This document shows positions 28,977 through 64,000 of a stretch of 64,000 nucleotides of DNA, piece by piece. The first letter of the stretch is position 1. Each line of letters begins with the position of its first letter. Position numbers and translations under genes: made by a program. The stretch is taken from the NCBI RefSeq assembly GCF_006345805.1, contig NC_043002.1:100812001-100876000 (forward strand). The letters run 5' to 3'. The DNA is from Octopus sinensis (Eukaryota). The notes under the pieces are model-generated. The model worked only from the letters and a program-made list of their open reading frames with translations. It made no database searches and was not told where the DNA came from.

Positions 28977-29000
28977 AAATGTGTATGTATGTATGTATGT

Positions 29001-31425: not shown

Positions 31426-31580
31426 ATTGTAAGTGGGATGATGGTGGATGTGTTGCTAAAAGTACAAAATGGAGTGTCGTCAGGGCCGGCGGGTCTTGCT
31501 GGTCTTACACCTGCGACTATAAAGGAAAAACAGACGTTAGAGCCGAAAAGAAATTTCTCGGAAAATGTTCACCTCTGTGA
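31426..31580 (+). CDS. Third coding exon (Cys module 2) of the predicted secreted protein
   Basis: Acceptor tttcttatcaacaacAG (31424-31425), phase 1 start; reads (Y)CKWDDGGCVAKSTKWSVVRAGGSCWSYTCDYKGKTDVRAEKKFLGKCSPL then TGA (31578-31580). A possible donor GTGAGT at 31577 overlaps the stop, so a short further exon cannot be excluded. Confidence 0.8.
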
Positions 31581-32011
31581 GTATTTATGTGAAGCTATTA
31601 AAATTACTTCATATATTACATTTTCTCAATATCATTGTTGCGTTGACCTTTTTGCAACATTTCCTCTTCTGTTCTAAATTTAGCTCAAACTTTGAAGTGA
31701 AGATACAAATCTGAGGATTTCGAGTTGAACATTAAAAATACATTTAAAATACCTTTTTTTAAAAAATTTATAATGTGCTTGTCTTTTTGTTTGTCAGAGA
31801 AGCCCATATCACACTGTTTACTATTTCTCAAGTAGATCATGACTGCTGCTATATTTTCAATATACAGGATATTCCATTATAGTTTTTCTTAGCCAATTTT
31901 TCATCAGAACTAGAGAGTAAAATAACTACATGCTTCTTCCTATTATCATAGCAGATTGAACATAGGGAGAAAATATCCCAACCATAATTTGGAGTGGCGA
32001 ACGCCTTCTTC

Positions 32012-32440
32012 AAGGCAACGAGATGGCAGAAACGTTAGCACGCCGGGCGAAATGCGTAGCCGTATTTCGTCTGCCGTTACGTTCTAGGTTCAAATTCCGC
32101 CGAGGTCGACTTTGCCTTTCATCCTTTCCGGGTCGATAAATTAAGTACCAGTTACGCACTGAGGTCGATATAATCGACTTAATCCGTTTGTCTGTCCTTG
32201 TTTGTTCTCTCGGTGTTTAGCCCCTTGTGGGTAGTAAAGAAATAGGTATTTCGTCGGCCGCTACGTTCTGAGTTCAAATTCCGCCGACGTCGACTTTGCC
32301 TTTCATCCTTTCGGGGTCGATAAATTAAGTACCAGTTACGCACTGGGGTCGATATAATCGACTTAATCCGTTTGTCTGTCCTCGTTTGTCTGTCCTCGTT
32401 TGTCCTCTCTGCGTTTAGCCCCTTGTGGGTAGTAAAGAAA
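32012..32440 (+). mobile_element. SINE family B, dimeric
   Basis: Two tandem units, each with gttcaaattccgccga..gtcgactttgcctttcatcc...agccccttgtgggtagtaaagaaa. Confidence 0.9.
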
Positions 32441-38309: not shown

Positions 38310-39860
38310 AAATCATAGATAAATATGAGAAGAGTGCTTGCAGTGGAGATAGCACGGGAATTCGACCGAAGCATATCGACGTTTTGCACCATCTTGAAGA
38401 AAAACGACGAGATGAAGGCTGTTACAGTAGTAAAGGGTGTCTGACTCCAGGCTCTCTAAGTAACTCACTTCTGTCCACGAAAGGACGGGAAAATTGCATC
38501 TCCTGAAGCAACTCGCAGAGGATACGATTACATAGACCATCATCTGCGGGAAAGGACGGGCGCTGTATGGAAATCTCCTGAATAAGAACCCTGGAACATC
38601 GACAGAGGAAACATTAGCAGACGCATATGAAACCAGTCGTGGCTGCTGTCATAATTTAAAGAAGAGGACTGGTGTTCATAGCGTCGTCAAGTATACAGAG
38701 GCAGCGAGTTCTGACACGAAAGCAGCTGAAGATTTCGTGCGTGAGTTCCGTCAGCTCATCGCAGCCGAGGGGTACACAACTGGTAGTCAACTGTGGTGAA
38801 ACTGACCTTTTTTGGAAAGAAATGCCCAGAACATACATATCTTTAGACGAGAAAAAATTCCAGGCTAAATATCGTCCTTCGTGCCAATGTGAGTGGAGAC
38901 ATGAAGATTAAGATACTCCTTGTTTACCGTTCCGAAACCCCTGCGCGTTCAAGTCGCACAAAATCCCGAAGGAGAAGCTGCAGGTCATGTGGAGGACAAA
39001 CGTTAAACCCTGGGTAACCAGGCAATTCTTCTTAAATTTATTTTCCGTACCTTTCACTCAACACTACCCCTATCTTGCAGCCCAGAGGCCAACAGGTGAT
39101 TTTTAATTTTAAAAAGTTGAATACCAAACACCTGTTTCCTCGGTCCTTTGGATTCACCGGAAATACAAATCTAACCCTTCGTGAGTTTTGAAATGAGCAC
39201 TGCAGCATTGTATACTGCCTGAAAATCATCAATATAGCCTGGCATGGTGTAACGAGAACACTGGATTCTGCATGGAGTAAACTGTGGTCTAACTGCGTAT
39301 CTGAAAACGTCTTCGAAGAGTTTGAGTCTCAGATACCTGTAGTTGAGGAGATAGTTTCTCATAGGAAGTCCATGGGCCTTTCGGTTAATGGGGGACAGTA
39401 ACGATCTCATCGAGGAGCTGACTCAGAGAAGCTGACGACAGATGAACTCCTACAGCTTCAGGAGCAGGAGCATTTGGATGCGGTGGAAGAGATAGGTTCC
39501 TCAAAGGAGAACAGTGAAGCGGAAAATACTGAGGGGAATGTAGCGAAGAATACCGAGTGACATACATGCAGTGTTTGCAAAGTCGCAGTATGTTTCTGAA
39601 TTTGTAGATAAATATCATCCTGTAAAAGTAGCTACAGATCGTACAGCTGTTTAATTTAATGACTCTGCTCTGGCGCATTTTCGTAACATTTTGGAAGGCA
39701 GGAAAAAGCAGGCTTATCTTGATATGTTTCTAATGCAAAGACCTGCAAATTAAAAAAAGTGGTGAACGTGTATCCAAAAATATTAAATGAAGTGAAGTGA
39801 GAGAGAAAATGCTAGAAATTGTTCTTCCTCAAGTTTTAATGAAATGGAATTCTCCTTCCC
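38310..39860 (+). mobile_element. Tigger/pogo (CENP-B type) transposase remnant
   Basis: NFKKRTGVHSVV..EAASSDTKAAEDFVREFRQLI, VNCGETDLFWKEMP, VMWRTNVKPWVTRQFF; its 3' part enters the palindrome arm. Confidence 0.85.
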
Positions 39861-39923
39861 GCTCTATCGTCTTCCCCGCGCACATATCGTTCCATCTTTA
39901 AGGTAATTCAGTTAATATAATCC

Positions 39924-40320
39924 AAGGCGGCGACCTGGCAAAATCGTTAGCACGCCAGGCGACAAGCTTAACGGTATTTCGTCTGTCTTTATGTTCTGAG
40001 TTCAAAATTCCGCCGAGGTCGACTTTGCCTTTCATCCTTTCGGGGTCGATAAATTAAGTACAATTTACGCACTGGAGTCGATGTAATCGACTTAATACCT
40101 ATGTCTGTCCTTGTTTGGCCCCTCTATGTTTAGCCCCTTGTGGGTAATAAAGAAATAGGTATATCATTTGTCTTTACGTTCTGAGTTCAAATTCCGCCGA
40201 GGTCAAATTTGCCTTTCATCCTTTCGGCGTCGATAAATTAAGTACCGGTTGCGTATTGGGATCGATCTTATCAACTGGCACCTTCCCCCAAGATTTCCGG
40301 TTTTGTTCTTCGAGTAGAAA
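39924..40320 (+). mobile_element. SINE family B dimer (left arm)
   Basis: Same dimeric layout as 32012-32440. Confidence 0.88.
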
Positions 40321-40749
40321 ATAATTCACTTAATAAAATCAGTTTCCATATTTCTTTTGCATTCTTTCTTTATAATTGTCATTTTACCTCTCTCTCTCTC
40401 TCTCTTTTTTTTTTTTTTTTACTCTGGTGAAGTCTTAGTAGTAGGCAATAGATAGTAGGTGGTAGTAGTCCTAAAAGAATATTTGATATGGAGTCTTGGT
40501 TTTCGTTGTTTAAGACAGCAAAGTAAATAATGATATCAAGAACAAAATGAGAAATTTAATAATGCTAATAGCACTATCTGGCAACCAAGCTAGATTGCAA
40601 CGGTGAAGGCTTTTCCAGAATGAAAGTGTTTCGTCCACTTGTGACAGTGATGTATTGTGACTCTCTATTAAAAGGGACAATACTTACACAGCATCATCGC
40701 AGATTCATATTTCTTAAATTCTAAGGAAACTTTTATGTAAAAAAAAAAG

Positions 40750-42125
40750 ACCAATACCACAATGCAGGAAGAAAACAGGGTCTTTAATGAAGATTAGGGA
40801 CTGCAGTATTAATTTGTACCTTGGAAAGTTAAGAAGGTTTGTTTTCTTTGTGATACTGCGATAACGACATTAACACTTAATGCTCATCAACTCTATACGA
40901 CTCATAAAGATAATAAATATTTCAATTTAGAGGAAGAGACACGAAATTTTGGTCTGCAAACATTTAAAGAATGGAAAACAAAAGCAAATACAGCTATTTC
41001 AGTCTGTGCCGAGATCTGAAAATTATGTCACAGAAGCAACTTGCACAGTTGCTATTATACTGAGGAAAAAAGGTAAGCCTTTCAGGGATGTGGGAATTGT
41101 GAAACAGTGTATTACTGAAGTCAAAGCATGCTCAAACTCCGATAAGATTTCAAACTATAAATAATTACCTCTTTCGAAGAGAACCATAACTGAACAGCAG
41201 TATAAGTTATCCCCCAATGTAACAGAACAAATTCACTCTTACGTATGTGCAGATGGTACTCCTTCCATGACTGGAAAACGTAAAAGATTTATTGCTTAGA
41301 TAAGTTGTATTAGATCCAGATGTTCTCATAAATTTTCCTCGTATATATCATCAGCAAAATTTACTTTTTTAACTATATTGTTAACTATATTCGTACCAAT
41401 GCAACAATGCTACGTTATTTACATAACGTGCTGCGGTTGGACAATGAAGTATTCGGTGTGCATTTGATGTATCTCTCTAGTGTGTTGACTTGCAAGGACG
41501 GGTATTAGAAAACTTTTTAACTTTATGGGGGCAGATAATAAAATTTATTAGGAACAGAATAAACAATGTGAATTATTAGATGAATATTTCTATACAAATA
41601 CTGTATTTCTTTGATATATCATGCCAAAGCAAAATGACTTGAATATTTGTTTGTAGGGTAAAACAAAATTTATGACGTGGCAAAAGTTCAAGCATTTCCG
41701 AAAAAAACTTTCTATTTTGAAAGATTTTTTCCTTTAAAATGAAATTTTAACTGTACACTTTCCTCATTTAGCTAAGGCTATTTATGACCACGAACATCCG
41801 CTTGAAACCGTTGATGAACATGCAGGTGTTCTGGATTAATTAAGTGAAGAATACTGTGAAAAGTTCACTGACTTGGCGGAAGATGATATTACACAGATAT
41901 TCAACCATATTGAGTTGATCCTTGCAATACTCACAAAGTGATGCAGGTGAAATTAATCGAGTTCTCAGAATATTACATCTTAAAGTCGCTATTTAACGTT
42001 AAAAAGGATCCAGTTGAAGTAAGGAAAAAGGTAGTAGAATACCCACGACTTTTTCAACATACGCAAAATTTGCTTTCTTGCGTCTCTATAACATATTGCT
42101 AATAATTTATATTTTCAAACTTAAA
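40750..42125 (+). mobile_element. hAT (Buster/SPIN-like) transposase remnant (left arm)
   Basis: Homologous to 4430-5950; LPLSKRTITEQ, VCADGTPSMTGKRKRF. Confidence 0.85.
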
Positions 42126-42134
42126 CATAACATA

Positions 42135-44017
42135 GGCCTTCTTTCTTTACGCGAAAGAAACAGCCTCAGTACGCGTAAAGATAGAACCCCTCTTCCAAAA
42201 GAATGGCTCCCTCACAGACAGTCCAACTAGGATCAGTGAGGTACTGAATGATCAGTTCAAAAGTGTCTTTACCTCTCCGTTGGAACACAGACAATTGAAC
42301 GAACCAGTGGACTTCTTTGCCGCTTCACATACAACCAGCGAGGCAATTACGATGGAATACATTGACATTAGTGAAGAAGATATACCACTAGCCATAGTCG
42401 AAGTGGACACAAACTCAACTGCTGGTCCTGATGGATTCCCAGCAATCCTGCTCAAATCGTGTAAGCATGCGCTGGCAAAACCCCACCAGATTCTCTTCCA
42501 GAGACAGCTAAGCAAGCTGAAGGAGGGAATAATATGCCCAATCCATAAAGGGGGAAGCAGAGCAGATGCCCAAAACTATAAGCCTATCTCTTTGACTTCA
42601 CACATCAGCAAAGTCATGGAACGGATAGTCAGAGGGAAAGTAATTGCATTCCTTGAAGAAAATAACTGAGATATACCCACCATGGCTTTCGACCAGGTAG
42701 GAGCTGCTTGACCCAGCTCTTACAACATTATGACTGGGTGTTGAGGTAGTTACTCAACAACTCAAGTATGGACGTAATATACCTTGATTTTGCAAAAGCT
42801 TTTGACAAGGTGGATCATGGTATGATATGCCACAAACTGCGTGATCTCGACATAGCTGGAGAACTTGGAGAGTGGTCACATGACTTTCTGAAAGAAAGAA
42901 GTCAGGTAGTAGTGGCTAACGGAGCCACTTCAACGAAAACACGAACAGTGAACGGTGTTCCACAAGGCACTGTCTTGGGACTGTCTTTAGAGTGGCTCTC
43001 TCAGATATGACCTGAAGAACCCAGATAGCCACCCCTGCAAGTTACGCAGACGATACGAAAGTCTCGCAGAAAATACAGAACCCCAGCGATGTTGCACATC
43101 TGCAGTAGGAGTTGGACCCAAGTTACAGATGGTCTGATGATAATATTATGCAGTTTAGTGCTGGAAAATTCCAAGCCCTGCGCTACCAGCGTCCAAAACT
43201 GAATATGAAACTTACAGGATACACTAGTACACAGGGAATTTCAATCCCAGAGCCTAAATCAGTGAGAGACCTGGGTATCCACATGAGTGATGATACCTCT
43301 TTCCAATTGAACATTACCAAGATGTCGAGAAAGTGCAGATGACTAGCTGGATGGATCCTGAGAACATTCAGAACCAGGGATATGAAAACCAAGATGGTCC
43401 TCTGGAGGACAGTCGTCCACAGTCGCCTGGATTACTGCTCACATCTATGGTCACCCAACAGCGTGAAATTAACAGCGGACCTTGAAGCAATCCAGAGAAT
43501 ATTCACAAAGAAGACCGTCCCTTTGCAACTGCTCAGGTACTGGGAAAGGCTGAAACAGCTAAGACTCTATTCCCTGGAGAGAAGGCGGGAGAGGTATGCA
43601 GTAATATACATCTGGAAGATCCTGGAAATGATTGTGCCAAATTTTGGCACTGAAAGCTACACCAATGCCAGAACGGGACGACACTGCTTAGTGCCAAAGA
43701 TCCCACCAACGCCATCGCGCTTCAGGAGCAGTTACAGCAACAGCCTGGGTTTCAAGGGCCCACAACTTTTTAATATTCTCCCAAAGAGGCTAATGAACCT
43801 GCACAAAGTAGATGTAGGCGTTTTTAAATCAAATCTGGAACTCTTCCTGTCGAGAGTCACAGATGAACCTACCTCACGGCAAGAGGTGCAAAAGAGGTTA
43901 GCTATATCAAACTCCATTCTTCACCATGTGCCACATATTGGAGGAGGCTCTACAGTAATAACACTGTAGCAAAACGACGGTGCATCAGCTTGGCTGCAGC
44001 TCTGAGCTGAAACTACA

Positions 44018-44020
<3 letters not shown>
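42135..44020 (+). mobile_element. CR1/L2-group LINE RT, 5'-truncated (left arm)
   Basis: TAGPDGFPAILLK, NYKPISLTSHISKVMERIV, DVIYLDFAKAFDKVDH, GVPQGTVLG, YADDT, SRLDYCS; frameshifted. Confidence 0.92.
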
Positions 44021-44067
<47 letters not shown>

Positions 44068-44101
44068 TGTAGTTTCAGCTCAGAGCTGCGGCCAAGCTGA
44101 T
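43984..44101. repeat. Short fold-back palindrome of the LINE 3' end around (TA)n
   Basis: atcagcttggctgcagctctgagctgaaactacagaa-(TA)n-ttctgtagtttcagctcagagctgcggccaagctgat; 37-bp arms with 1 mismatch; mirrored at 59812-59932. Confidence 0.95.
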
Positions 44102-44305
44102 TGGTAAATGTTTTTGATTTTCACTCTCGATAAATTTATCCCTTTTTTGTGTCCCTAGCACTTGGCATCCTTATTTAGGAGCCCTTAATTATATTTCTAC
44201 ATGAATAATATTTTTCTATATGAATAATATTTTGTCTAATGACTAATTCGTCCTTTGTGCTGGGCCACTGGTAGTAATCTATATTATTACCCTTTTGATT
44301 ATATT

Positions 44306-44392
<87 letters not shown>

Positions 44393-44959
44393 TATGTATG
44401 CATGTATGCATGTATGTGTGTATGTATGTATGTAAGCATGTATATACTTACTTGGAAATGGATACGTTGCGTTCAATTAAATAAAATTATAAGTAATATA
44501 TATATATGTGTGTGTGTGTGTGTATGTGTGTACATATATGGGTACAGGACGTAACCAACAGTAAACAACATGAATTCCGAAAACAAATGAATAAAATAAG
44601 CAAATAACGAGTGAAAAAAGGACAAATAATACAAAGAATGTTCTTCATCAGTTGTCGGATGTCTATCTACTCCCCATTTCGAGTAATAAATGACAATATG
44701 AGACTTCGAAGACAGTTGCTTCCATAAATACCAAAATATAATTTTGCAATTTACGGAGGGCCAAAGTTAGCGAAAAAAAAACAGGATAATGGAGGGAAAC
44801 CGCCAAATTATAGCGTTCTTTATCCTAGGACACGCAATGTCAGTAACTGAGTAGATATTCTTTATGATAAAAGAGTGTAAAACTCCTTCGCTGCTCAAAA
44901 ACAAATACAAAAATAATGTTATTTCCTCTTCTTAATAATATTGTTATGTCTCCTTCACC

Positions 44960-46034
44960 TAATCAACAATGTTATTTCTTCTTCTTCAAACTAAGAACCT
45001 TCCCAATATTGTTGGTTGTAACTTTCTTCTACGGTGGATATTTTCTTATCCGTAAAAAGCATGTTTCTATGAGCACCGTCAGTGTACCGGAGAAGAAGCT
45101 GTTTAGATCATGTCGTTCTGCTCACTTTCAGTGAAGGAGCTAACATGCCCTGTACATCGACGATAGGCACTCACCACTAGATCTTAAATAGATAAATAAA
45201 TAAATAAGTAAATAAAGAGAAACTTTCTGCGTTTGAGCTATCTCCGTATAACTGTTCTGCGCTTTTAAGGCAGCGATTACAGCGTACCCTTTCAATTGCT
45301 GTGATACCCTTGTGTCTGACATTATTTATTTGAAATGTAAGGTTTTAAAAAACTGAATGAGCAAGAAAATTAAAGCTCTTGAACCACGTGACGTCAAAAA
45401 CCCGACGTAGATGTATATATGTGCATATCTGTCTATCTATCGATCAATCACTCTACGATATTATCTTTTCTGTCGTGTGGATCGGGGCACCCTTTATTTA
45501 TTCACTTTATTAACTTCAGGTGCAGAAGAAGAAACCGTTGTTTTCACTTCTCTACGAGCCATAAAATATCTTTAGTTCTCAGCAAGTATTTTATAAATTG
45601 TCATTCTTATCCACTTCAGGTTTGGCACTGAGATATATTGTCAGCAGCTGTTTATTAGTATTGAAGATCTTACATTCAGTTATAGATACTCATTGTGTTC
45701 GCAGTCTTCATTCTTTTAAATTTCTTCACAGCTTTGTCCTTTTCGTATACGTAAGTGAACTTCTAAAATTATCTTATTTTTTAATGGAATTCGTATGAAA
45801 TATTTAAATGTTTGTTTTGCTTTATAACTCAGATATGATTTAAAAAATTGAATTTTTTCGTCAATGTGTTCATGTAGTACATAAATTTGGAAACGTGTCT
45901 AATATAAAGTTACCTGGAGGTTTGTTGATTTTATTTTATTGGTAAAGAACAAAATATATGGTCTAAATCTAAAATAATTGTATTTTCTGTTTTTGGGTGT
46001 GAATATGTCCTACTTATCTATGTATATATCTATC

Positions 46035-46040
<6 letters not shown>
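44960..46040 (-). mobile_element. Tc1/mariner-type transposase relic (left arm; mirror about 57875-58960 +)
   Basis: MSDTRVSQQLKGYAVIAALKAQNSYTEIAQ (HTH start) and NMLFTDKKISTVEESYNQQ (first catalytic motif, decayed). Confidence 0.65.
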
Positions 46041-46084
<44 letters not shown>

Positions 46085-46087
<3 letters not shown>

Positions 46088-46731
46088 TAAGCAACAAGAT
46101 ATCAAGTAGTGATGCAGTACGACCGTTCCAAGCGGCTCCATTTAATTCAGCAATGTAATCATTATATTGTTTTGTCTAAGGCATGATACAACCATAGAAT
46201 TAATTTTTTAACACAGAAAATATAACGCCTACTAATAATATAAATAATTAGAGGGAGAATACAGGCTTACTTGGTCGGGGAAACAGATCTACTATGAAAG
46301 CATCCGCCAAACCCATCAATTTAAATAATGAGATAAGTAACAATTACAAATTAGATACTATAACGAGTAGGAATAATAGTTTGTATAATAATTGTAGTGA
46401 GGCGGTTGAGCGGATTATGCCACCATCTAATGATAAGAAAAATTCTGATAGTATAGCCAAACCTAATAATCAAGTCACGAGTTTGGAAGGTGGTGAAAGA
46501 GGAAGTAGATTCGGTCTTTATATACGAAAGAGAACTGAAAATAAGGATTTGGTCTGGTTTAATGTTCCATTCAACTGTGCCATATCCACCAACATATATA
46601 AGGAATTTATGGAAATTTTGGAGAAAAAAAACTTCCCTGTTTCCTATAGATATAATAGAATATTTTCCGTAAGACAGTTAGAATATTGTATTCTATCCTC
46701 CTCAATATAGGTACCATCATATAGTTAAACA

Positions 46732-46735
<4 letters not shown>
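46085..46735 (+). mobile_element. Penelope-like fragment (RT-EN linker), interrupted by (AAT)n and Dong (mirror about 57175-57830 -)
   Basis: LVWFNVPFNCAISTNIYKEFMEILEKKNFP...IFSRKTVRILYS matches the WFNPP...KxSYSC linker of PLEs. Confidence 0.65.
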
Positions 46736-46779
<44 letters not shown>

Positions 46780-46827
46780 TAATAATAATAATAATAATGA
46801 TAATAATAACAATAATAATAATGATAA

Positions 46828-47700
46828 TTGGCACTGTCACCTCTATCTGATATGCTAAATAGAACTGGATGCGGATATAAATGTTACGGCAAAACGATCA
46901 GCCACCTTTTATATATGGATGAACTAAAACTATACGCTGCAAACGACAAACAGCTGGAAACACTATTAAAGAGAGTTTATAGATTTACCAAAGAAATAGA
47001 TATGAAATTTGGATTACAAAAATGCGCCAAAGTAACCATCAAAAGAGGAAAACTGGTTAAGAGTAGCAACATCACACTAGATAAAACCAATGAAATAAAA
47101 TAATTAGACCAAAACCAAACTTACAAATACTTAGGAATCCATGAACTAGATAAGACACAACACACAAAAATGAAAGAGAAAATAAAAAAAGAATATTATA
47201 GACGAGTTAGATCAATACTAAAAACAGAGCTCAATGCTAAAAACAAGATAATAGGTATTAATACTTTAGCTGTCCCAGTTATAAGTTACAGCTACAATAT
47301 CCTTAACTGGACACTAAATGAACTGACCAAAATAGATAGGAAAACAAGAAAAATAATGACAGGATCTAGGATGCATCACCCAAAATCTGACATAGAAAGA
47401 CTATATATACAACGTATAGAAGGTGGTAGAGGCCTTATACAGCTGGAAAACTACTATAAAATAACCACCATAGAACCGCAAAAATATCTACTTCAGAAGG
47501 AAGGAAAACTGATACAAATAGCGGCAAAACACGAGCAAAACGAAAAATTGTTCTCAGTATTTAAGGAAGCTGACAAATACAAACAAGAAATCATACCACC
47601 TAATAAATATGAAGAAGAAGAAGAAGAAGAAGAAGAAGAAGAAGAAGAAGAAGAAGAAGAAGAAGAAGAAGAAGAAGAAGAAGAAGAAGAAGAAGAAGAA

Positions 47701-47731
<31 letters not shown>

Positions 47732-48680
47732 ATTATGATGAAGAAGCAACAAAAGCTATAAAACAAATGAAATCCAAACTAAAAATAGAACAGCAACGAA
47801 CCATGATAAAACGATGGCAAGAAAAGCCCCTTCATGGTAAATACTGGACTAAACTAAACGCAAAAGAAATAGACAAGAAAAATCCCAGCAATGGTTGAGA
47901 AGCTCAGGACTCAAAGCAGAGACAGAGGGATTTTTAATTGCAGCACAAGACCAAAGCCTCCCCACCAGAAATTACCAAAAACATGTAATGAAAAGAAATA
48001 TAACAAGTAACTGCAGAATATGTGGAGATGGACAAGAAACAATAAATCATATTATCTCTGGCTGCCCAGTCTTGGCTAAGAAGGAATATATTCACAGACA
48101 TGACAGAGTTGGAACCTACATACACTGGAAGCTATGCCAACATTATGGAATAACAACAGAAAAAAGATGGTATAGGCACACGCCAGAAAAGGTCACAGAA
48201 AACGAGAAAGCAACTATGTTCTGGGATATGCCAATACACACAGATAGAGAAATTAAGGCAACAGACCAGATATAGTTGTCAGAGATCATGAAGAAAAAAA
48301 TGCTTTCTAATTGATGTATCAATACCAGCAGATGACCACGTGTCTCTAAAAGAAATGGAGAAACTTTCAAAATACAAAGACCTGGAAATAGAGGTAACCA
48401 GAATGTGGAATCTGAAAACAGAAACAATTCCTATCATAGTAGGTGCATTAGGCATGATAAAAAAATATTCAGACAAATACATAACAAAAACACCAGGACT
48501 TACAAACACATATAACATACAGAAAATTGCACTACTAGGCACTGCACACATCCTACGCAGAACACTTTCCATACAATAACCATCAGAGTATCACAACAAA
48601 TCACAGCACATACCTATGGCACACAGAGCTGCGATCGGTAGTGAAGTGAAAGCACGCTATAAAAATAAAGCTACTGAATG
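46828..48680 (+). mobile_element. R4/Dong-clade non-LTR retrotransposon, 5'-truncated and young, inserted in (AAT)n (left arm)
   Basis: HLLYMDELKLY, FGLQKC, HPKSDIERLY..GGRGL, CCHC finger CRICGDGQETINHIISGC, RLE motif RPDIVV..LIDVSIP..EKLSKYKDLE; (AAT)n at 46737-46827 and 48681-48770; in-frame (GAA)n at about 47611-47731. Confidence 0.92.
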
Positions 48681-50706: not shown

Positions 50707-50754
50707 AAAATCTGTTACTCTGAGTTTCTCGTTGCCGTTCATCAGACAGTTTTT
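50707..50754 (-). ncRNA. Minimal type I hammerhead-like motif (left arm)
   Basis: Minus strand: aaaaactgt CTGATGA a-cg-GCAA-cg-a GAAA ctcagag TA acagatttt. Cores are intact; the stem II closing pair is an A:A mismatch. Confidence 0.6.
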
Positions 50755-53084: not shown

Positions 53085-53132
53085 AAAAACTGTCTGATGA
53101 ACGGCAACGAGAAACTCAGAGTAACAGATTTT
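53085..53132 (+). ncRNA. Minimal type I hammerhead-like motif (right-arm mirror)
   Basis: Identical to the reverse complement of 50707-50754. Confidence 0.6.
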
Positions 53133-55120
53133 GTTGATTTCCTGCTGCTTAAAATAAAGTATATATATATATATTTTATAATTATGAGTATAATTATTTT
53201 TGCTGAACCCTAATTATAATTATACTCATAATCATTAATTTTTTGTTTAAGTTTACCAATAATGGTTCTTTTCACATACCGAACTACTTGGTAAAATTAT
53301 TAATTATTGATTAATTAATTAATTTTACCCTTTATTACTATTGATAATATATATATACTTGACTTAAGTTGAATCACCAAGTTAGTCCAGTATTATCCGC
53401 ACACAGCTCGAAAGTGAATAAAATCAAAATAAGCAACAGGATATCAATTAGTGAATCAGTACGGCCGTTTCAAATGGATCCATTTATTTGAACAATGCAA
53501 TCATTACATTAATTTAAATGCAGTGGCATATTCAACTCCACAAATACATAGTAAGACATTCATATAATTATTCTAAAATATTTTAACAGAGGAAGAAGAT
53601 GGAAGAAATTGTAGCTAAGAATGAAGTACACTTCTAAGAATAGCATGTAGTCAAGTGGGGTCATAATGTTGTAAGGAATTATAATTCATTTCCAATTCAT
53701 TTATCATCTACTAAATCTATTTATCATCTACTAAATCTAAGACTAGAAACTGTGTCTATTTTGAATAAAGGGCAACGGTGCGTTGACAGCTAATGGCTAG
53801 TTAAGGTCATAAATATTATCATATGTATCCCTTTTCCGGAGGGAGGAAATAAGACATTAGAAGTTGTAAGTTAAATATAAGTAACTGTCTATGAAAAGAG
53901 GCAGGGTGGTGGTAGACATTAAATCATGATGTTAATTACCAGTTAAAGAGGTAAGACACTAGGAAAATTAAGATCTTAATACAAAGGAAATTATATTTTG
54001 GGACACTATGGATGATTGGTTATATACAATATTGTTATGTTGTATAAAAATAAATTTCAGAATTTCAAAAATGATATCATAAATGAAATTGGTAAAGGGT
54101 GTGTATATATCAATTCTAAACATTAGAACGGAAAGATTACGTAGAATCAGTTTAATATTCATTCATGTACTTAATTAATTTCTTATTAGGTAGTTTCTAT
54201 AAAGATCGCTCAGGGCATTTACCTATCGAATAACTGGACAAATATACATGCTATCTATTAATTTTAAACTACGAATCAGAAAAATAGTAAAGATGCATAC
54301 AGATTCGCACACATTTATATATGTGTATATATGCATATATACACGTACATAAGTATTTATACGTTTATATGGATATATTATAACCATCTTGCATGAACTT
54401 AAGTAACTGAAAAATATATATTTAAGAACAAGAAAAATAACAATTTATAGGTGATAAGAGGTTAATAAGTAAGGATCTCAAAATATGAAAACAAAATAAG
54501 AATTTATAGAAAATAATAGAAAGCCATATAACATACATATAAAGAGTATTAATATTAGAGATAGAGAAGAGATAAAGGTAACCCGAAAATAGGGGGTAAT
54601 AGGCATTGAAGTAGTGAGGGCAATTAAAGGTATTCAGACCGAAGAGATTATATATGTTGTAATGTTACAGATGCTATTGAGTGTATGATTTTGTAGTCTC
54701 TAAGATGTATATGATTTAGTCGAAAGTTGACGTACATAAAGTCACTGCAAATATACGTAATATGAACAGAAGGGCAGAACATCATAGAAAGAAAAATACT
54801 GTGATAGGCAGGGTCTATCATGGGGTAGTATTATATATAGCATACCACATATCATCATTCCTATCGTCGTTTTTGTTATTATTATTATTATAATTATTAT
54901 TACTATTACTACTACTATAATCTGTGTTATTATTGTTGTTATTATTTATATTTCCTTCAAAAGGCATTGTATCAGAAATACTTGTGCTAGTATAAACTTC
55001 GACGTCACCGTCTATATTGTACATATTAGATATGTTAGGACTGTTTTTTCTAATTCCCCACTTCCATTAATATTATCATCATTTTAGTGGTTTAAACTAG
55101 TGTTGACAACACTATTATTA

Positions 55121-55174
<54 letters not shown>

Positions 55175-55195
55175 CATTATTATTATTATTATTAT

Positions 55196-57088
55196 CATTC
55201 AGTAGCTTTATTTTTATAGCGTGCTTTCACTTCACTACCGATCGCAGCTCTGTGTGCCATAGGTATGTGCTGTGATTTGTTGTGATACTCTGATGGTTAT
55301 TGTATGGAAAGTGTTCTGCGTAGGATGTGTGCAGTGCCTAGTAGTGCAATTTTCTGTATGTTATATGTGTTTGTAAGTCCTGGTGTTTTTGTTATGTATT
55401 TGTCTGAATATTTTTTTATCATGCCTAATGCACCTACTATGATAGGAATTGTTTCTGTTTTCAGATTCCACATTCTGGTTACCTCTATTTCCAGGTCTTT
55501 GTATTTTGAAAGTTTCTCCATTTCTTTTAGAGACACGTGGTCATCTGCTGGTATTGATACATCAATTAGAAAGCATTTTTTTCTTCATGATCTCTGACAA
55601 CTATATCTGGTCTGTTTGCCTTAATTTCTCTATCTGTGTGTATTGGCATATCCCAGAACATAGTTGCTTTCTCGTTTTCTGTGACCTTTTCTGGCGTGTG
55701 CCTATACCATCTTTTTTCTGTTGTTATTCCATAATGTTGGCATAGCTTCCAGTGTATGTAGGTTCCAACTCTGTCATGTCTGTGAATATATTCCTTCTTA
55801 GCCAAGACTGGGCAGCCAGAGATAATATGATTTATTGTTTCTTGTCCATCTCCACATATTCTGCAGTTACTTGTTATATTTCTTTTCATTACATGTTTTT
55901 GGTAATTTCTGGTGGGGAGGCTTTGGTCTTGTGCTGCAATTAAAAATCCCTCTGTCTCTGCTTTGAGTCCTGAGCTTCTCAACCATTGCTGGGATTTTTC
56001 TTGGTCTATTTCTTTTCCGTTTAGTTTAGTTCAGTATTTAACATGAAGGGGCTTTTCTTGCCATCGTTTTATCATGGTTCGTTGCTGTTCTATTTTTAGT
56101 TTGGATTTCATTTGTTTTATAGCTTTTGTTGCTTCTTCATCATAATCTTCTTCTTCTTCTTCTTCTTCTTCTTCTTCTTCTTCTTCTTCTTCTTCTTCTT
56201 CTTCTTCTTCTTCTTCTTCTTCTTCTTCTTCTTCTTCTTCTTCTTCTTCTTCTTCTTCTTCTTCTTCTTCTTCTTCTTCTTCTTCTTCTTCTTCTTCTTC
56301 TTCTTCATATTTATTAGGTGGTATGATTTCTTGTTTGTATTTGTCAGCTTCCTTAAATACTGAGAACATTTTTCGTTTTGCTCGTGTTTTGCCGCTATTT
56401 GTATCAGTTTTCCTTCCTTCTGAAGTAGATATTTTTGCGGTTCTATGGTGGTTATTTTATAGTAGTTTTCCAGCTGTATAAGGCCTCTACCACCTTCTAT
56501 ACGTTGTATATATAGTCTTTCTATGTCAGATTTTGGGTGATGCATCCTAGATCCTGTCATTATTTTTCTTGTTTTCCTATCTATTTTGGTCAGTTCATTT
56601 AGTGTCCAGTTAAGGATATTGTAGCTGTAACTTATAACTGGGACAGCTAAAGTATTAATACCTATTATCTTGTTTTTAGCATTGAGCTCTGTTTTTAGTA
56701 TTGATCTAACTCGTCTATAATATTCTTTTTTTATTTTCTCTTTCATTTTTGTGTGTTGTGTCTTATCTAGTTCATGGATTCCTAAGTATTTGTAAGTTTG
56801 GTTTTGGTCTAATTATTTTATTTCATTGGTTTTATCTAGTGTGATGTTGCTACTCTTAACCAGTTTTCCTCTTTTGATGGTTACTTTGGCGCATTTTTGT
56901 AATCCAAATTTCATATCTATTTCTTTGGTAAATCTATAAACTCTCTTTAATAGTGTTTCCAGCTGTTTGTCGTTTGCAGCGTATAGTTTTAGTTCATCCA
57001 TATATAAAAGGTGGCTGATCGTTTTGCCGTAACATTTATATCCGCATCCAGTTCTATTTAGCATATCAGATAGAGGTGACAGTGCCAA
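55196..57088 (-). mobile_element. R4/Dong element (right-arm mirror)
   Basis: ORFs 55566-55982-, 56117-56746- and 56813-57088-; longer uninterrupted (GAA)n. Confidence 0.92.
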
Positions 57089-57115
57089 TTATCATTATTA
57101 TTATTGTTATTATTA

Positions 57116-57179
<64 letters not shown>

Positions 57180-57824
57180 TGTTTAACTATATGATGGTAC
57201 CTATATTGAGGAGGATAGAATACAATATTCTAACTGTCTTACGGGAAAATATTCTATTATATCTATAGGAAACAGGGAAGTTTTTTTTCTCCAAAATTTC
57301 CATAAATTCCTTATATATGTTGGTGGATATGGCACAGTTGAATGGAACATTAAACCAGACCAAATCCTTATTTTCAGTTCTCTTTCGTATATAAAGACCG
57401 AATCTACTTCCTCTTTCACCACCTTCCAAACTCGTGACTTGATTATTAGGTATGGCTATACTATCAGAATTTTTCTTATCATTAGATGGTGGCATAATCC
57501 GCTCAACCGCCTCACTACAATTATTATACAAACTATTATTCCTACTCGTTATAGTATCTAATTTGTAATTGTTACTTATCTCATTATTTAAATTGATGGG
57601 TTTGGCGGATGCTTTCATAGTAGATCTGTTTCCCCGACCAAGTAAGCCTGTATTCTCCCTCTAATTATTTATATTATTAGTAGGCGTTATATTTTCTGTG
57701 TTAAAAAATTAATTCTATGGTTGTATCATGCCTTAGACAAAACAATATAATGATTACATTGCTGAATTAAATGGAGCCGCTTGGAACGGTCGTACTGCAT
57801 CACTACTTGATATCTTGTTGCTTA

Positions 57825-57878
<54 letters not shown>

Positions 57879-59522
57879 GATAGATATATACATAGATAAG
57901 TAGGACATATTCACACCCAAAAACAGAAAATACAATTATTTTAGATTTAGACCATATATTTTGTTCTTTACCAATAAAATAAAATCAACAAACCTCCAGG
58001 TAACTTTATATTAGACACGTTTCCAAATTTATGTACTACATGAACACATTGACGAAAAAATTCAATTTTTTAAATCATATCTGAGTTATAAAGCAAAACA
58101 AACATTTAAATATTTCATACGAATTCCATTAAAAAATAAGATAATTTTAGAAGTTCACTTACGTATACGAAAAGGACAAAGCTGTGAAGAAATTTAAAAG
58201 AATGAAGACTGCGAACACAATGAGTATCTATAACTGAATGTAAGATCTTCAATACTAATAAACAGCTGCTGACAATATATCTCAGTGCCAAACCTGAAGT
58301 GGATAAGAATGACAATTTATAAAATACTTGCTGAGAACTAAAGATATTTTATGGCTCGTAGAGAAGTGAAAACAACGGTTTCTTCTTCTGCACCTGAAGT
58401 TAATAAAGTGAATAAATAAAGGGTGCCCCGATCGACACGACAGAAAAGATAATATCGTAGAGTGATTGATCGATAGATAGACAGATATGCACATATATAC
58501 ATCTACGTCGGGTTTTTGACGTCACGTGGTTCAAGAGCTTTAATTTTCTTGCTCATTCAGTTTTTTAAAACCTTACATTTCAAATAAATAATGTCAGACA
58601 CAAGGGTATCACAGCAATTGAAAGGGTTCGCTGTAATCGCTGCCTTAAAAGCGCAGAACAGTTATACGGAGATAGCTCAAACGCAGAAAGTTTCTCTTTA
58701 TTTACTTATTTATTTATTTATCTATTTAAGATCTAGTGGTGAGTGCCTATCGTCGATGTACAGGGCATGTTAGCTCCTTCAGTGAAAGTGAGCAGAACGA
58801 CATGATCTAAACAGCTTCTTCTCCGGTACACTGACGGTGCTCATAGAAACATGCTTTTTACGGATAAGAAAATATCCACCGTAGAAGAAAGTTACAACCA
58901 ACAATATTGGGAAGGTTCTTAGTTTGAAGAAGAAGAAATAACATTGTTGATTAGGTGAAGGAGACATAACAATATTATTAAGAAGAGGAAATAACATTAT
59001 TTTTGTATTTGTTTTTGAGCAGCGAAGGAGTTTTACACTCTTTTATCATAAAGAATATCTACTCAGTTACTGACATTGCGTGTCCTAGGATAAAGAACGC
59101 TATAATTTGGCGGTTTCCCTCCATTATCCTGTTTTTTTTTCGCTAACTTTGGCCCTCCGTAAATTGCAAAATTATATTTTGGTATTTATGGAAGCAACTG
59201 TCTTCGAAGTCTCATATTGTCATTTATTACTCGAAATGGGGAGTAGATAGACATCCGACAACTGATGAAGAACATTCTTTGTATTATTTGTCCTTTTTTC
59301 ACTCGTTATTTGCTTATTTTATTCATTTGTTTTCGGAATTCATGTTGTTTACTGTTGGTTACGTCCTGTACCCATATATGTACACACATACACACACACA
59401 CACACACATATATATATATTACTTATAATTTTATTTAATTGAACGCAACGTATCCATTTCCAAGTAAGTATATACATGCTTACATACATACATACACACA
59501 TACATGCATACATGCATACATA

Positions 59523-59607
<85 letters not shown>

Positions 59608-59844
59608 AATATAATCAAAAGGGTAATAATATAGATTACTACCAGTGGCCCAGCACAAAGGACGAATTAGTCATTAGACAAAATATTATTCATATAGAAA
59701 AATATTATTCATGTAGAAATATAATTAAGGGCTCCTAAATAAGGATGCCAAGTGCTAGGGACACAAAAAAGGGATAAATTTATCGAGAGTGAAAATCAAA
59801 AACATTTACCAATCAGCTTGGCCGCAGCTCTGAGCTGAAACTAC

Positions 59845-59894
<50 letters not shown>

Positions 59895-59898
<4 letters not shown>

Positions 59899-61785
59899 TG
59901 TAGTTTCAGCTCAGAGCTGCAGCCAAGCTGATGCACCGTCGTTTTGCTACAGTGTTATTACTGTAGAGCCTCCTCCAATATGTGGCACATGGTGAAGAAT
60001 GGAGTTTGATATAGCTAACCTCTTTTGCACCTCTTGCCGTGAGGTAGGTTCATCTGTGACTCTCGACAGGAAGAGTTCCAGATTTGATTTAAGAACGCCT
60101 ACATCTACTTTGTGCAGGTTCATTAGCCTCTTTGGGAGAATATTAAAAAGTTGTGGGCCCTTGAAACCCAGGCAGTTGCTGTAACTGCTCCTGAAGCGCG
60201 ATGGCGTTGGTGGGATCTTTGGCACTAAGCAGTGTCGTCCCGTTCTGGCATTGGTGTAGCTTTCAGTGCCAAAATTTGGCACAATCATTTCCAGGATCTT
60301 CCAGATGTATATTACTGCATACCTCTCCCGCCTTCTCTCCAGGGAATAGAGTCTTAGCTGTTTCAGCCTTTCCCAGTACCTGAGCAGTTGCAAAGGGACG
60401 GTCTTCTTTGTGAATATTCTCTGGATTGCTTCAAGGTCCGCTGTTAATTTCACGCTGTTGGGTGACCATAGATGTGAGCAGTAATCCAGGCGACTGTGGA
60501 CGACTGTCCTCCAGAGGACCATCTTGGTTTTCATATCCCTGGTTCTGAATGTTCTCAGGATCCATCCAGCTAGTCATCTGCACTTTCTCGACATCTTGGT
60601 AATGTTCAATTGGAAAGAGGTATCATCACTCATGTGGATACCCAGGTCTCTCACTGATTTAGGCTCTGGGATTGAAATTCCCTGTGTACTAGTGTATCCT
60701 GTAAGTTTCATATTCAGTTTTGGACGCTGGTAGCGCAGGGCTTGGAATTTTCCAGCACTAAACTGCATAATATTATCATCAGACCATCTGTAACTTGGGT
60801 CCAACTCCTACTGCAGATGTGCAACATCGCTGGGGTTCTGTATTTTCTGCGAGACTTTCGTATCGTCTGCGTAACTTGCAGGGGTGGCTATCTGGGTTCT
60901 TCAGGTCATATCTGAGAGAGCCACTCTAAAGACAGTCCCAAGACAGTGCCTTGTGGAACACCGTTCACTGTTCGTGTTTTCGTTGAAGTGGCTCCGTTAG
61001 CCACTACTACCTGACTTCTTTCTTTCAGAAAGTCATGTGACCACTCTCCAAGTTCTCCAGCTATGTCGAGATCACGCAGTTTGTGGCATATCATACCATG
61101 ATCCACCTTGTCAAAAGCTTTTGCAAAATCAAGGTATATTACGTCCATACTTGAGTTGTTGAGTAACTACCTCAACACCCAGTCATAATGTTGTAAGAGC
61201 TGGGTCAAGCAGCTCCTACCTGGTCGAAAGCCATGGTGGGTATATCTCAGTTATTTTCTTCAAGGAATGCAATTACTTTCCCTCTGACTATCCGTTCCAT
61301 GACTTTGCTGATGTGTGAAGTCAAAGAGATAGGCTTATAGTTTTGGGCATCTGCTCTGCTTCCCCCTTTATGGATTGGGCATATTATTCCCTCCTTCAGC
61401 TTGCTTAGCTGTCTCTGGAAGAGAATCTGGTGGGGTTTTGCCAGCGCATGCTTACACGATTTGAGCAGGATTGCTGGGAATCCATCAGGACCAGCAGTTG
61501 AGTTTGTGTCCACTTCGACTATGGCTAGTGGTATATCTTCTTCACTAATGTCAATGTATTCCATCGTAATTGCCTCGCTGGTTGTATGTGAAGCGGCAAA
61601 GAAGTCCACTGGTTCGTTCAATTGTCTGTGTTCCAACGGAGAGGTAAAGACACTTTTGAACTGATCATTCAGTACCTCACTGATCCTAGTTGGACTGTCT
61701 GTGAGGGAGCCATTCTTTTGGAAGAGGGGTTCTATCTTTACGCGTACTGAGGCTGTTTCTTTCGCGTAAAGAAAGAAGGCCTATG
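59895..61785 (-). mobile_element. CR1/L2-group LINE (right-arm mirror)
   Basis: ORFs nearly identical to the left-arm copy. Confidence 0.92.
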
Positions 61786-61789
61786 TTAT

Positions 61790-63135
61790 GTTTAAGTTTG
61801 AAAATATAAATTATTAGCAATATGTTATAGAGACGCAAGAAAGCAAATTTTGCGTATGTTGAAAAAGTCGTGGGTATTCTACTACCTTTTTCCTTACTTC
61901 AACTGGATCCTTTTTAACGTTAAATAGCGACTTTAAGATGTAATATTCTGAGAACTCGATTAATTTCACCTGCATCACTTTGTGAGTATTGCAAGGATCA
62001 ACTCAATATGGTTGAATATCTGTGTAATATCATCTTCCGCCAAGTCAGTGAACTTTTCACAGTATTCTTCACTTAATTAATCCAGAACACCTGCATGTTC
62101 ATCAACGGTTTCAAGCGGATGTTCGTGGTCATAAATAGCCTTAGCTAAATGAGGAAAGTGTACAGTTAAAATTTCATTTTAAAGGAAAAAATCTTTCAAA
62201 ATAGAAAGTTTTTTTCGGAAATGCTTGAACTTTTGCCACGTCATAAATTTTGTTTTACCCTACAAACAAATATTCAAGTCATTTTGCTTTGGCATGATAT
62301 ATCAAAGAAATACAGTATTTGTATAGAAATATTCATCTAATAATTCACATTGTTTATTCTGTTCCTAATAAATTTTATTATCTGTCCTTGCAAGTCAACA
62401 CACTAGAGAGATACATCAAATGCACACCGAATACTTCATTGTCCAACCGCAGCACGTTATGTAAATAACGTAGCATTGTTGCATTGGTACGAATATAGTT
62501 AACAATATAGTTAAAAAAGTAAATTTTGCTGATGATATATACGAGGAAAATTTATGAGAACATCTGGATCTAATACAACTTATCTAAGCAATAAATCTTT
62601 TACGTTTTCCAGTCATGGAAGGAGTACCATCTGCACATATACAAGTGTGAATTTGCTCTGTTACATTGGGGGATAACTTATACTGCTGTTCAGTTATGGT
62701 TCTCTTCGAAAGAGGTAATTGTTTATATTTTGAAATCTTATCGGAGTTTGAGCATGCTTTGACTTCAGTAATACACTGTTTCATAATTCCCACATCCCTG
62801 AAAGGCTTACTTTTTTTCCTCAGTATAATAGCAACTGTACAAGTTGCTTCTGTGACATAATTTTCAGATTTCGGCACAGACTGAAATAGCTGTATTTGCT
62901 TTTGTTTTCCATTCTTTAAATATTTGCAGACCAAAATTTCGTGTCTCTTCCTCTAAATTGAAATATTTATTATCTTTATGAGTCGTATAGAGTTGATGAG
63001 CATTAAGTGTTAATGTCGTTATCGCAATATCACAAAGAAAACAAACCTTCTTAACTTTCCAAGGTACAAATTAATACTGCAGTCCCTAATCTTCATTAAT
63101 GACCCTGTTTTCTTCCTGCATTGTGGTCTTGGTCT
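61790..63135 (-). mobile_element. hAT remnant (right-arm mirror, with a 33-bp deletion)
   Basis: ORF 62584-62934-; lacks left-arm 41500-41532. Confidence 0.85.
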
Positions 63136-63462
63136 TTTTTTTTACGTAAAAGTTTCCTTAGAATTTAAGAAATACGAATCTGCGATGATGCTGTGTAAGT
63201 ATTGTCCCTTTTAATAGAGAGTCACAATACATCACTGTCACAAGTGGACGAAACACTGTCATTCTGGAAAACCCTTCACCGTTGCAATCTAGCCCGGTTT
63301 CCAGATAGTGCTATTTGCATTATTAAATTTCTCATTTAGTTCTTGATATCATTATTTACTTTGCTGTCTTAAACAACGAAAACCAAGACCCCATATCAAA
63401 TATTCTTTTAGGACTACTACCACCTACTATCTATTGCCTACAACTAAGCCTTCACCAGTAAA

Positions 63463-63513
<51 letters not shown>

Positions 63514-63584
63514 TAAAATGACAATTACAAAGAAAGAATGTAAAAGAAATATGGAAACTGATTTTATTAACTGAATTGTTTTCT

Positions 63585-63785
63585 ACTCGAAGAACAAAAC
63601 CGGAAATTTTGGGGAAAGGTGCCAGTTGATGAGATCGACCCCAATACGCAACCGGTACTTAATTTATTGACGCCGAAAGGCAAAGTCGACCTCGGCGGAA
63701 TTTTGAACTCAGAACATAAAGACAGACGAAATACCGTTAAACTTGTCGCCTGGTGTGCTAACGATTTTGCCAGGTCGCCGCCTTG
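63585..63785 (-). mobile_element. SINE family B collapsed to a single hybrid unit (right arm)
   Basis: Joins unit-1 gactttgcctttc directly to unit-2 ggcgtc; lacks left-arm 40034-40225. Confidence 0.85.
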
Positions 63786-64000
63786 GATTTTATTTACTGA
63801 ATTACCTTAAAGATGGAACGATATGTGCGCGGGGAAGACGATAGAGCGGGAAGGAGAATTCCCTTTCATTAAAACTTGAGGAATAACAATTTCTAGCATT
63901 TTCTCTCTCACTTCACTTCATTTAATATTTTTGGATACACGTTCACCACTTTTTTTAATTTGCAGGTCTTTGCATTAGAAACATATCAAGATAAGCCTGC

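What the first reader, a model, noticed from the sequence alone, without database searches (positions are those of the whole stretch)
39708..64000. Palindrome of at least 24 kb folded on a (TA)n tract: real fold-back duplication or haplotype-join artefact
Seen: arms of at least 12 kb meet with essentially no unique spacer at about 51903-51945, and the distal end lies beyond the window. Established: spacer-less palindromes of this size are unstable in vivo, AT-rich hairpin sites seed them, and fold-back chimeric long reads also create them in assemblies. Inference: the allele-like arm differences plus a noisy apex fit a single fold-back read bridging two haplotypes. A genuine template-switch or breakage-fusion duplication is not excluded. 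If the arm continues about 8 kb past the window, it would hold a second copy of exon 3 of the secreted-protein gene.
Basis: partly seen in the sequence, partly recalled or inferred. Interest (0 to 1): 0.7.

Follow-up and report, generated by a model that had tools for sequence, protein, structure and literature searches.

The report
Fold-back false duplication in assembly
The 24-kb mirror-image repeat is really in the sequence, but its turning point looks like uncorrected single-read noise, so it is most likely one locus assembled twice and not a real genomic palindrome.

Summary
Window 39708-51925 and 51926-64000 are reverse complements: 99.2% identical over aligned columns, with 95 substitutions and 60 gap events. 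They meet inside a 43-bp (TA)n tract with no unique spacer. The right arm is cut by the window end, so 39708 is not a biological boundary.

The differences fall into three kinds. (1) From the apex to about 1.24 kb on the right arm (51926-53160) there are 36 one- to three-base indels, 12 times the density seen further out. Difference density is 18% in the first 50 bp. Bases missing at non-homopolymer sites are lopsided (17 from the right arm, 4 from the left). Two perfect tandem repeats in the left arm are broken in the right arm. This is raw long-read error confined to one arm. (2) Two patches of transition-biased substitutions (1.6% and 2.9%), microsatellite length changes, a 33-bp indel and a SINE-unit copy difference look allelic. 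(3) About 7.5 kb in between is almost identical.

Best reading (about 0.8): an assembly artefact. [quoted passage not shown] A real palindrome is not excluded (about 0.1), because no reads or other assemblies could be reached.

The parts
39708..51902 (+). Left arm. It is the cleaner copy and probably the true path of the contig. It is a mosaic of SINE-like units, a hAT-like ORF, LINE fragments, microsatellites and AT-rich unique DNA.
   Evidence: Internal tandem repeats at 51506-51544 and 51617-51653 are perfect here. zf-RVT domain at 47895-48275.
51903..51945 (.). Apex: an interrupted (TA)n tract of 43 bp. It is self-complementary, and the arms meet here without a unique spacer.
   Evidence: The DNA fold of 51860-51990 is -38 kcal/mol, z = -10.2. 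(TA)n tracts of at least 16 bp cover only 1.8% of the sequence.
51926..53160 (-). Error-dense inner part of the right arm, inferred to be sequence carried by one or very few noisy long reads.
   Evidence: 36 indels of 1-3 bp within 1.75 kb of the apex, against 13 in 7.5 kb further out. 17 against 4 non-homopolymer bases are missing from this arm. The tandem repeats are broken here (52189-52224, 52293-52332).
53161..54738 (-). Clean right-arm stretch. It holds a complex 36+12-bp indel (53661-53714) and a substitution-only patch (20 substitutions, 13 transitions and 7 transversions). It looks allelic.
54739..62383 (-). Near-identical part of the right arm (0.13% substitutions). The remaining differences are mostly microsatellite or homopolymer lengths, for example the GAA/TTC tract with 40.7 copies in the left arm and 53.7 in the right.
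62384..64000 (-). Distal right arm, cut by the window end. It has 2.9% substitutions (30 transitions, 16 transversions), a 33-bp indel, a 20-bp (AG)n difference, and one SINE-like unit where the left arm has two (a 192-bp difference).

Best explanation
This is an assembly artefact: a false inverted duplication. In the real genome the locus exists once per haplotype, and the left arm continues past the (TA)n tract into sequence that is not shown here. At the self-complementary (TA)n tract a fold-back long read entered the layout. Such a read carries one strand followed by its complement; it is made in library preparation or is an unsplit template/complement read. The assembler then walked back along the same locus in reverse orientation. 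For about 1.2 kb after the turn, only that read (or very few reads in one direction) supports the second arm, so raw deletion-rich errors survive. Later polishing reads preferred the clean left copy. Further out, reads of the other haplotype were recruited to the second arm, giving a clean sequence that differs in an allelic way. What is shown: the palindrome, the missing spacer, the one-sided error gradient, and the two kinds of difference. What is inferred: the number of supporting reads, the sequencing platform, and the haplotype origin of the outer right arm. A close variant of the same artefact is that an inverted haplotig was joined and the gap was closed with raw read sequence, using the strand-symmetric (TA)n as the overlap.
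For: Small-indel density is 12 times higher within 1.75 kb of the apex than at 3-10.5 kb (36 against 13; p = 2e-16). Difference density is 18 per 100 bp in the first 50 bp, 4-7 per 100 bp out to 750 bp, then 1-3. The same contig is otherwise well polished, since the arms differ by 0.3% or less over 7.5 kb; this serves as an internal control. The noise is one-sided: 17 against 4 non-homopolymer bases are missing from the right arm (p = 0.007). Two perfect tandem repeats in the left arm carry 4 derived indels in the right arm. Missed bases and low quality starting exactly at an inverted-duplicate junction, in the arm read second, are the documented behaviour of nanopore reads (PMC7229812). Fold-back artefact reads make up about 0.55-0.6% of ONT genomic reads, mostly carry no adapter, and can tangle assembly graphs (PMC12870357). 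No adapter is present here. Outer differences are allele-like: transitions to transversions about 1.9 (43:23), microsatellite lengths, a SINE-unit copy number and complex indels. This matches 'heterotype' false duplication joined through an error-read junction (PMC9516828). No unique spacer is present, whereas all 21 sequenced human germline fold-back duplications had a spacer of 766 bp to 70 kb (PMC3907307).
Against: No reads, depth, Hi-C or second assembly of this species could be reached, so the number of apex-spanning reads is inferred and not observed. The sequencing platform is unknown. An apex in a hairpin-forming (TA)n tract fits an in-vivo fold-back equally well. The patchwork of identical and 2-3% diverged segments is also what arm-to-arm gene conversion in an older real palindrome would give. 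Only 4 differences could be polarised, and no outgroup copy of the apex region exists in the window.
Confidence: 0.8

Rival explanations
1. This is a genuine germline palindrome. A break or stalled fork at the (TA)n tract folded back on itself, primed synthesis and produced an inverted duplication of at least 12 kb per arm. The arms have since diverged in patches and been partly homogenised by gene conversion. The apex noise is only a local assembly or base-calling difficulty at a real hairpin.
For: The apex lies in a self-complementary, hairpin-forming tract. The arms show blocks of about 0.1% and of 2-3% substitutions with a natural transition bias, as gene conversion would give. Real inverted duplicates also degrade nanopore base calls after the junction (PMC7229812).
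Against: With normal coverage from both strands, the consensus at a real apex should be as good as elsewhere and equally good on both arms. Here the noise is 12 times background and is confined to one arm. No spacer is present, unlike 21 of 21 sequenced human germline cases (PMC3907307). Spacer-less palindromes of this size are known to be unstable (established knowledge, not tested here). Scattered 1-bp deletions that decay with distance are not a known product of centre-breaking palindrome repair.
Confidence: 0.1
2. This is a real but rare DNA molecule: a somatic, mosaic or transposase- or nuclease-generated hairpin end at the (TA)n tract. It was present in a few cells, was sequenced once or a few times, and was then taken up by the assembler.
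For: It shares the one-sided noise and low support with the artefact reading. The non-random position in (TA)n points to a physical snap-back event and not a random chimera.
Against: It cannot be told apart from an in-vitro library artefact by sequence alone. Library-preparation fold-backs are frequent enough (about 0.6% of ONT genomic reads) to make this extra assumption unnecessary. It would still not be a feature of the germline genome.
Confidence: 0.07
3. This is a foldback-type transposable element whose very long terminal inverted repeats form the two arms.
For: The structure is an inverted repeat with almost no middle segment. The window is rich in transposons.
Against: The arms are a mosaic of unrelated pieces: SINE-like units, a hAT-like ORF, two different LINE fragments, microsatellites and unique AT-rich DNA. 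They are not subrepeat arrays. The arms exceed 12 kb, run off the window, and show no element boundary or target-site duplication. No other copy is present in the window.
Confidence: 0.02

Closest known systems
Fold-back (palindromic) artefact reads in long-read sequencing (Heinz, Meyerson and Li 2026, PMC12870357)
   Same: [quoted passage not shown] The breakpoints coincide and no adapter lies between them. These reads are known to tangle assembly graphs.
   Different: Here I see an assembled contig, not a read. The outer second arm carries allele-like differences, so reads from other molecules were recruited after the turn. The number of supporting reads is unknown.
Low-quality second arm of nanopore reads across inverted duplicates (Spealman et al. 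2020, PMC7229812)
   Same: Missed and wrong base calls begin exactly at the junction and affect the arm that is read second. The window shows deletion-biased noise beginning at the apex, on one arm only, and fading after about 1.2 kb.
   Different: That paper describes raw reads over real inverted duplications. The platform used for this assembly is not known, and a consensus should remove such noise unless support is very thin.
False 'heterotype' duplications in assemblies of heterozygous genomes (Ko et al. 2022, PMC9516828)
   Same: Two alleles are laid down as neighbouring copies in one sequence. They are joined through a gap or a 'depth-gap' made of error-containing reads, and they carry haplotype-specific differences.
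   Different: The two copies are inverted and abut directly with no N gap. Depth and k-mer criteria could not be tested.
Germline fold-back inverted duplications in humans (Hermetz et al. 2014, PMC3907307)
   Same: An inverted duplication seeded by short inverted homology at the turning point.
   Different: [quoted passage not shown] Here there is no spacer, and the chromosomal context is unknown.
Palindromic AT-rich repeats and other natural large palindromes, such as sex-chromosome amplicons and the Tetrahymena rDNA (from my own knowledge, not tested)
   Same: AT-rich self-complementary centres that can extrude hairpins, and arms kept similar by conversion.
   Different: PATRRs are a few hundred bp long. 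Long-lived large palindromes have a non-palindromic centre or spacer and uniformly very high arm identity, not an error gradient on one arm.

Membership tests
Fold-back long-read artefact carried into an assembly | Two halves are the same locus on opposite strands, with coincident breakpoints and no intervening unique sequence. | tested here: met
   the arms meet within the 43-bp (TA)n tract.
Fold-back long-read artefact carried into an assembly | The junction is supported by one or very few reads. | not testable with these tools
   No reads are available. The only proxy is one-sided raw-error-like noise at 12 times background next to the apex.
Fold-back long-read artefact carried into an assembly | Adapter remnant at the turning point (present in fewer than half of such reads, so not required). 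| tested here: not met
   No SMRTbell or ONT adapter within 3 mismatches anywhere in the window. This is neutral, given.
False heterotype duplication (criteria of Ko et al. 2022) | Half-normal read depth on both copies. | not testable with these tools
   No read data.
False heterotype duplication (criteria of Ko et al. 2022) | A gap or an error-read 'depth-gap' between the two copies. | tested here: inconclusive
   No N gap, but a 1.2-kb error-dense junction is present. Depth itself was not seen.
False heterotype duplication (criteria of Ko et al. 2022) | Haplotype-specific (single-copy) variants on both copies. | tested here: inconclusive
   Allele-like differences are present: 66 substitutions with transitions to transversions of 43:23 in two patches, plus microsatellite, SINE-unit and complex indels. 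Paralogous divergence would look the same without k-mer counts from reads.
Germline fold-back inverted duplication (Hermetz et al. 2014) | A single-copy spacer (766 bp to 70 kb) between the arms. | tested here: not met
   there is no unique sequence between the arms.
Germline fold-back inverted duplication (Hermetz et al. 2014) | Short inverted homology at the junction. | tested here: met
   Self-complementary (TA)n at the apex.
Germline fold-back inverted duplication (Hermetz et al. 2014) | An adjacent terminal deletion, new telomere, translocation or ring. | not testable with these tools
   The distal end is outside the window and the source contig could not be retrieved.
Long-lived ampliconic palindrome (sex-chromosome type) | A unique spacer and uniformly very high arm identity kept by gene conversion. 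| tested here: not met
   No spacer is present. Difference density ranges from 0 to 18 per 100 bp along the arms.
Foldback transposon | Arms are terminal inverted repeats of one element (often subrepeat arrays), with defined ends and other genomic copies. | tested here: not met
   The arms are a mosaic of unrelated TE fragments and unique DNA. No end lies inside the window and there is no other copy in it.

The most novel reading that the evidence does not exclude
This is a genuine spacer-less palindrome of at least 24 kb in the germline of a cephalopod-like animal. It would have formed by snap-back priming at a (TA)n microsatellite and been maintained long enough to gather 2-3% divergence in patches between gene-conversion tracts. 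It might also duplicate part of a lineage-specific cysteine-rich secreted-protein gene.
Probability: 0.1. Interest if true: 0.55.

Novelty: not a real feature. Interest (0 to 1): 0.15.

Why it matters
If it is an artefact, the value is practical. About 12 kb or more of this contig is a false inverted copy. Any gene copy beyond the window, including the suggested second exon 3 of the secreted-protein gene, would be a false gene gain. The true continuation of the left arm beyond the (TA)n tract is also missing at this point.

The one-sided error gradient next to a spacer-less apex is a useful signature that needs only the sequence. It could be used to flag such joins in other assemblies made from noisy long reads.

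If the palindrome were real, it would be an unusually large spacer-less palindrome tolerated in an animal germline and seeded by a common microsatellite. That would bear on how such structures escape hairpin processing.

Tried and rejected
1. Retrieving the source contig or other assemblies.
- Ten ORFs of the window are not in the 15-billion protein collection.
- The best named relative of the arm's LINE ORF is an Octopus vulgaris protein at only 57% identity.
- The spliced 98-aa translation of the cysteine-rich exons has no relative at all.
- An exact 44-mer from beside the apex is absent from the JGI metagenome contigs.
- So no independent copy of the locus was obtained.

2. An outgroup for polarising apex differences. 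No other copy of 48000-51925 exists in the window. Only internal tandem repeats could be used, giving 4 sites.

3. Adapter remnants at the apex. None were found.

4. The O. vulgaris locus L001. It shares only old repeats with the window (67-83% identity). It gives a weak taxonomic hint and no orthologous comparison.

5. A foldback transposon and a hairpin-ended replicon were considered. Both were rejected because the arms are ordinary TE-mosaic intergenic DNA of an animal genome.

Full report
**1. Is the palindrome there?**

Yes. The repeat finder reports a collinear series of inverted matches, from 39708-40033 paired with 63675-64000 inward to 50873-51235 paired with 52605-52967. blastn joins them into four blocks that reach 51920/51926.

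I aligned the right arm globally against the reverse complement of the left arm. The alignment has 11,941 ungapped columns, 95 mismatches (99.2% identity) and 60 gap events covering 411 bases.

The arms meet inside an interrupted (TA)n tract at 51903-51945. There is no unique spacer, no run of N and no SMRTbell or ONT adapter.

The last 326 bases of the window still match at 98%. The palindrome therefore runs off the window, and the start coordinate 39708 is only the mirror image of base 64000.

Other repeats in the window are transposon copies of at most 1.2 kb at 72-87% identity, plus one 494-bp tandem duplication at 97%. The palindrome stands well apart from that background.

**2. Where does the window come from?**

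The sequence is 30-44% G+C and rich in microsatellites. It is full of LINE, SINE-like, Helitron-like and other transposon fragments.

The only named relative of a LINE ORF in the arm is an Octopus vulgaris protein at 57% identity. One repeat is 67-83% identical to copies in an O. vulgaris chromosome.

The source is therefore an animal genome, probably a cephalopod or other mollusc. It is not O. vulgaris at this level of similarity. This identification is weak and nothing below depends on it.

**3. Anatomy of the arm-to-arm differences**

The differences are not spread evenly. Distances below are measured from the apex along the right arm.

| Zone | Window coordinates | What differs |
|---|---|---|
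| 0-1.24 kb | 51926-53160 | Dense 1-3-bp indels. Differences per 100 bp are 18 in the first 50 bp, 4-7 out to 750 bp, then 1-3. |
| about 1.24-1.74 kb | 53161-53660 | A clean stretch of about 500 bp. |
| about 1.74-2.8 kb | 53661-54738 | A complex 36+12-bp indel at 53661-53714, then a substitution-only patch: 20 substitutions, 13 transitions and 7 transversions. |
| 3-10.5 kb | roughly 54925-62425 | 10 substitutions (0.13%) and 13 small indels, mostly in microsatellites or homopolymers. One GAA/TTC tract has 40.7 copies in the left arm and 53.7 in the right. |
| 10.5-12.1 kb | roughly 62425-64000 | 46 substitutions (2.9%; 30 transitions, 16 transversions), a 33-bp indel and a 20-bp (AG)n difference. 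The left arm has two tandem SINE-like units where the right has a single recombinant unit (192 bp). |

**4. The apex noise is sequencing error, and it sits in one arm**

- *Density.* Within 1.75 kb of the apex there are 36 small indels, against 13 in the 7.5 kb between 3 and 10.5 kb. That is a 12-fold excess (binomial p = 2e-16). The same contig thus provides its own control: away from the apex the consensus is good, and at the apex it is not.
- *Direction.* Many of these indels are not in homopolymers, and they are lopsided. Seventeen non-homopolymer bases are missing from the right arm and 4 from the left (p = 0.007).
- *Polarity.* The left arm holds two perfect tandem duplications: a 20-mer at 51506-51544 and an 18-mer at 51617-51653. 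In the right arm the same repeats are imperfect (52293-52332 and 52189-52224). Read base by base, four indels break the repeat symmetry, and all four are in the right arm.

Real divergence between two arms of a palindrome would hit both arms alike, and it would not decay with distance from the centre. A consensus built from many reads in both directions would not keep 5-18% error.

**5. Mechanism**

*What the literature documents.*
- Fold-back reads are a documented artefact. They make up about 0.55-0.6% of ONT genomic reads. Fewer than half carry any searchable sequence at the turn. They are thought to arise in library preparation and can tangle assembly graphs (PMC12870357).
- Nanopore reads that cross an inverted duplicate show low quality, wrong calls and missed bases. 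These begin exactly at the junction and affect the arm read second (PMC7229812). That matches the deletion-biased, one-sided noise starting at the apex.
- False duplications of heterozygous loci carry haplotype-specific differences. They are joined through gaps or 'depth-gaps' made from error-containing reads (PMC9516828).

*The proposed sequence of events.*
1. The locus exists once per haplotype.
2. A fold-back read turning in the self-complementary (TA)n tract was used as a bridge. An equivalent route is raw-read gap closure that used the strand-symmetric tract as the overlap.
3. The first 1.2 kb after the turn rests on that read alone. It stayed unpolished because later reads align better to the clean left copy.
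4. Further out the second arm was built from reads of the other haplotype. That explains the clean but allele-like differences.

The apex lies in a (TA)n tract, and such tracts cover only 1.8% of the sequence. This points to a physical snap-back or a symmetric overlap, and not to a random chimera. It does not say whether the snap-back happened in a tube or in a cell.

**6. Rivals**

- *A genuine germline palindrome.* This is not excluded. The apex forms a strong hairpin (-38 kcal/mol, z = -10). The patchwork of identical and 2-3% diverged segments could come from gene conversion. However, this reading needs a separate explanation for one-sided noise at 12 times background. It also lacks the single-copy spacer found in all 21 sequenced human germline fold-back duplications (766 bp to 70 kb, PMC3907307). 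I give it about 0.1.
- *A rare real molecule.* A somatic or enzyme-made hairpin end that was sequenced once cannot be separated from a library artefact by sequence alone (about 0.07).
- *A foldback transposon.* This is rejected because the arms are a mosaic of unrelated elements and unique DNA with no ends in the window.

**7. What could not be done**

- None of ten window ORFs is in the protein collection.
- The cysteine-rich exon pair at 26104-26245 and 31426-31575 has no relative in the database.
- A 44-mer from beside the apex is absent from the JGI metagenome contigs.

As a result, no reads, no depth, no second assembly and no sequence beyond base 64000 were available. Whether a second copy of exon 3 lies beyond the window cannot be said. 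If it does, it would most likely be a false gene copy.

**8. Verdict**

This is most likely not a real genomic feature, so interest is low. The one-sided error gradient next to a spacer-less apex is a handy sequence-only flag for such joins.

Noticed in passing
window 26104-26245 and 31426-31575 (+): Two cysteine-rich exon-like ORFs with AG/GT borders and compatible phases. The joined 98-aa translation has no relative among 5.8 billion proteins, so it may be a lineage-specific orphan.
   Followed up: partly
window 19509-19989 and 24706-25678: A second, smaller inverted-repeat pair (about 480 bp, 95-96% identical). Its right copy is tandemly doubled with a 494-bp period. The pair encloses about 4.7 kb that includes a Pif1 2B-domain (Helitron-like) ORF at 22949-23269 and long ATT/TAA-type tracts. 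It could be a TIR-bounded element.
   Followed up: no
window 13357-13428 (+): A tRNA-Cys(GCA) gene or tRNA-derived repeat head (Rfam 51.6 bits; ARAGORN).
   Followed up: no
window 40005-40400; also 32011-32440, 21183-21413, 63640-63700: A SINE-like unit of about 190 bp. There are two tandem units in the left arm but one recombinant unit in the right arm, which looks like an unequal-exchange allele.
   Followed up: partly
window 11031-11785, 27802-29002, 42850-44046: Three copies of the 3' end of one LINE family (79-87% identical). Two of them end in a (TA)n tract, so some (TA)n microsatellites here may be LINE tails. Whether the apex tract is one of these was not determined.
   Followed up: no
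window 1109-1489 and L001 2946-3358, 15358-15494, 15989-16335: A repeat shared with an Octopus vulgaris chromosome (OX597824.1) at 67-83% identity. Together with a 57% protein match, it is the only hint to the taxon.
   Followed up: partly
window 47611-47732 and 56146-56306: A GAA/TTC microsatellite inside a LINE ORF reads as a poly-Glu run. It has 40.7 copies in one arm and 53.7 in the other.
   Followed up: no
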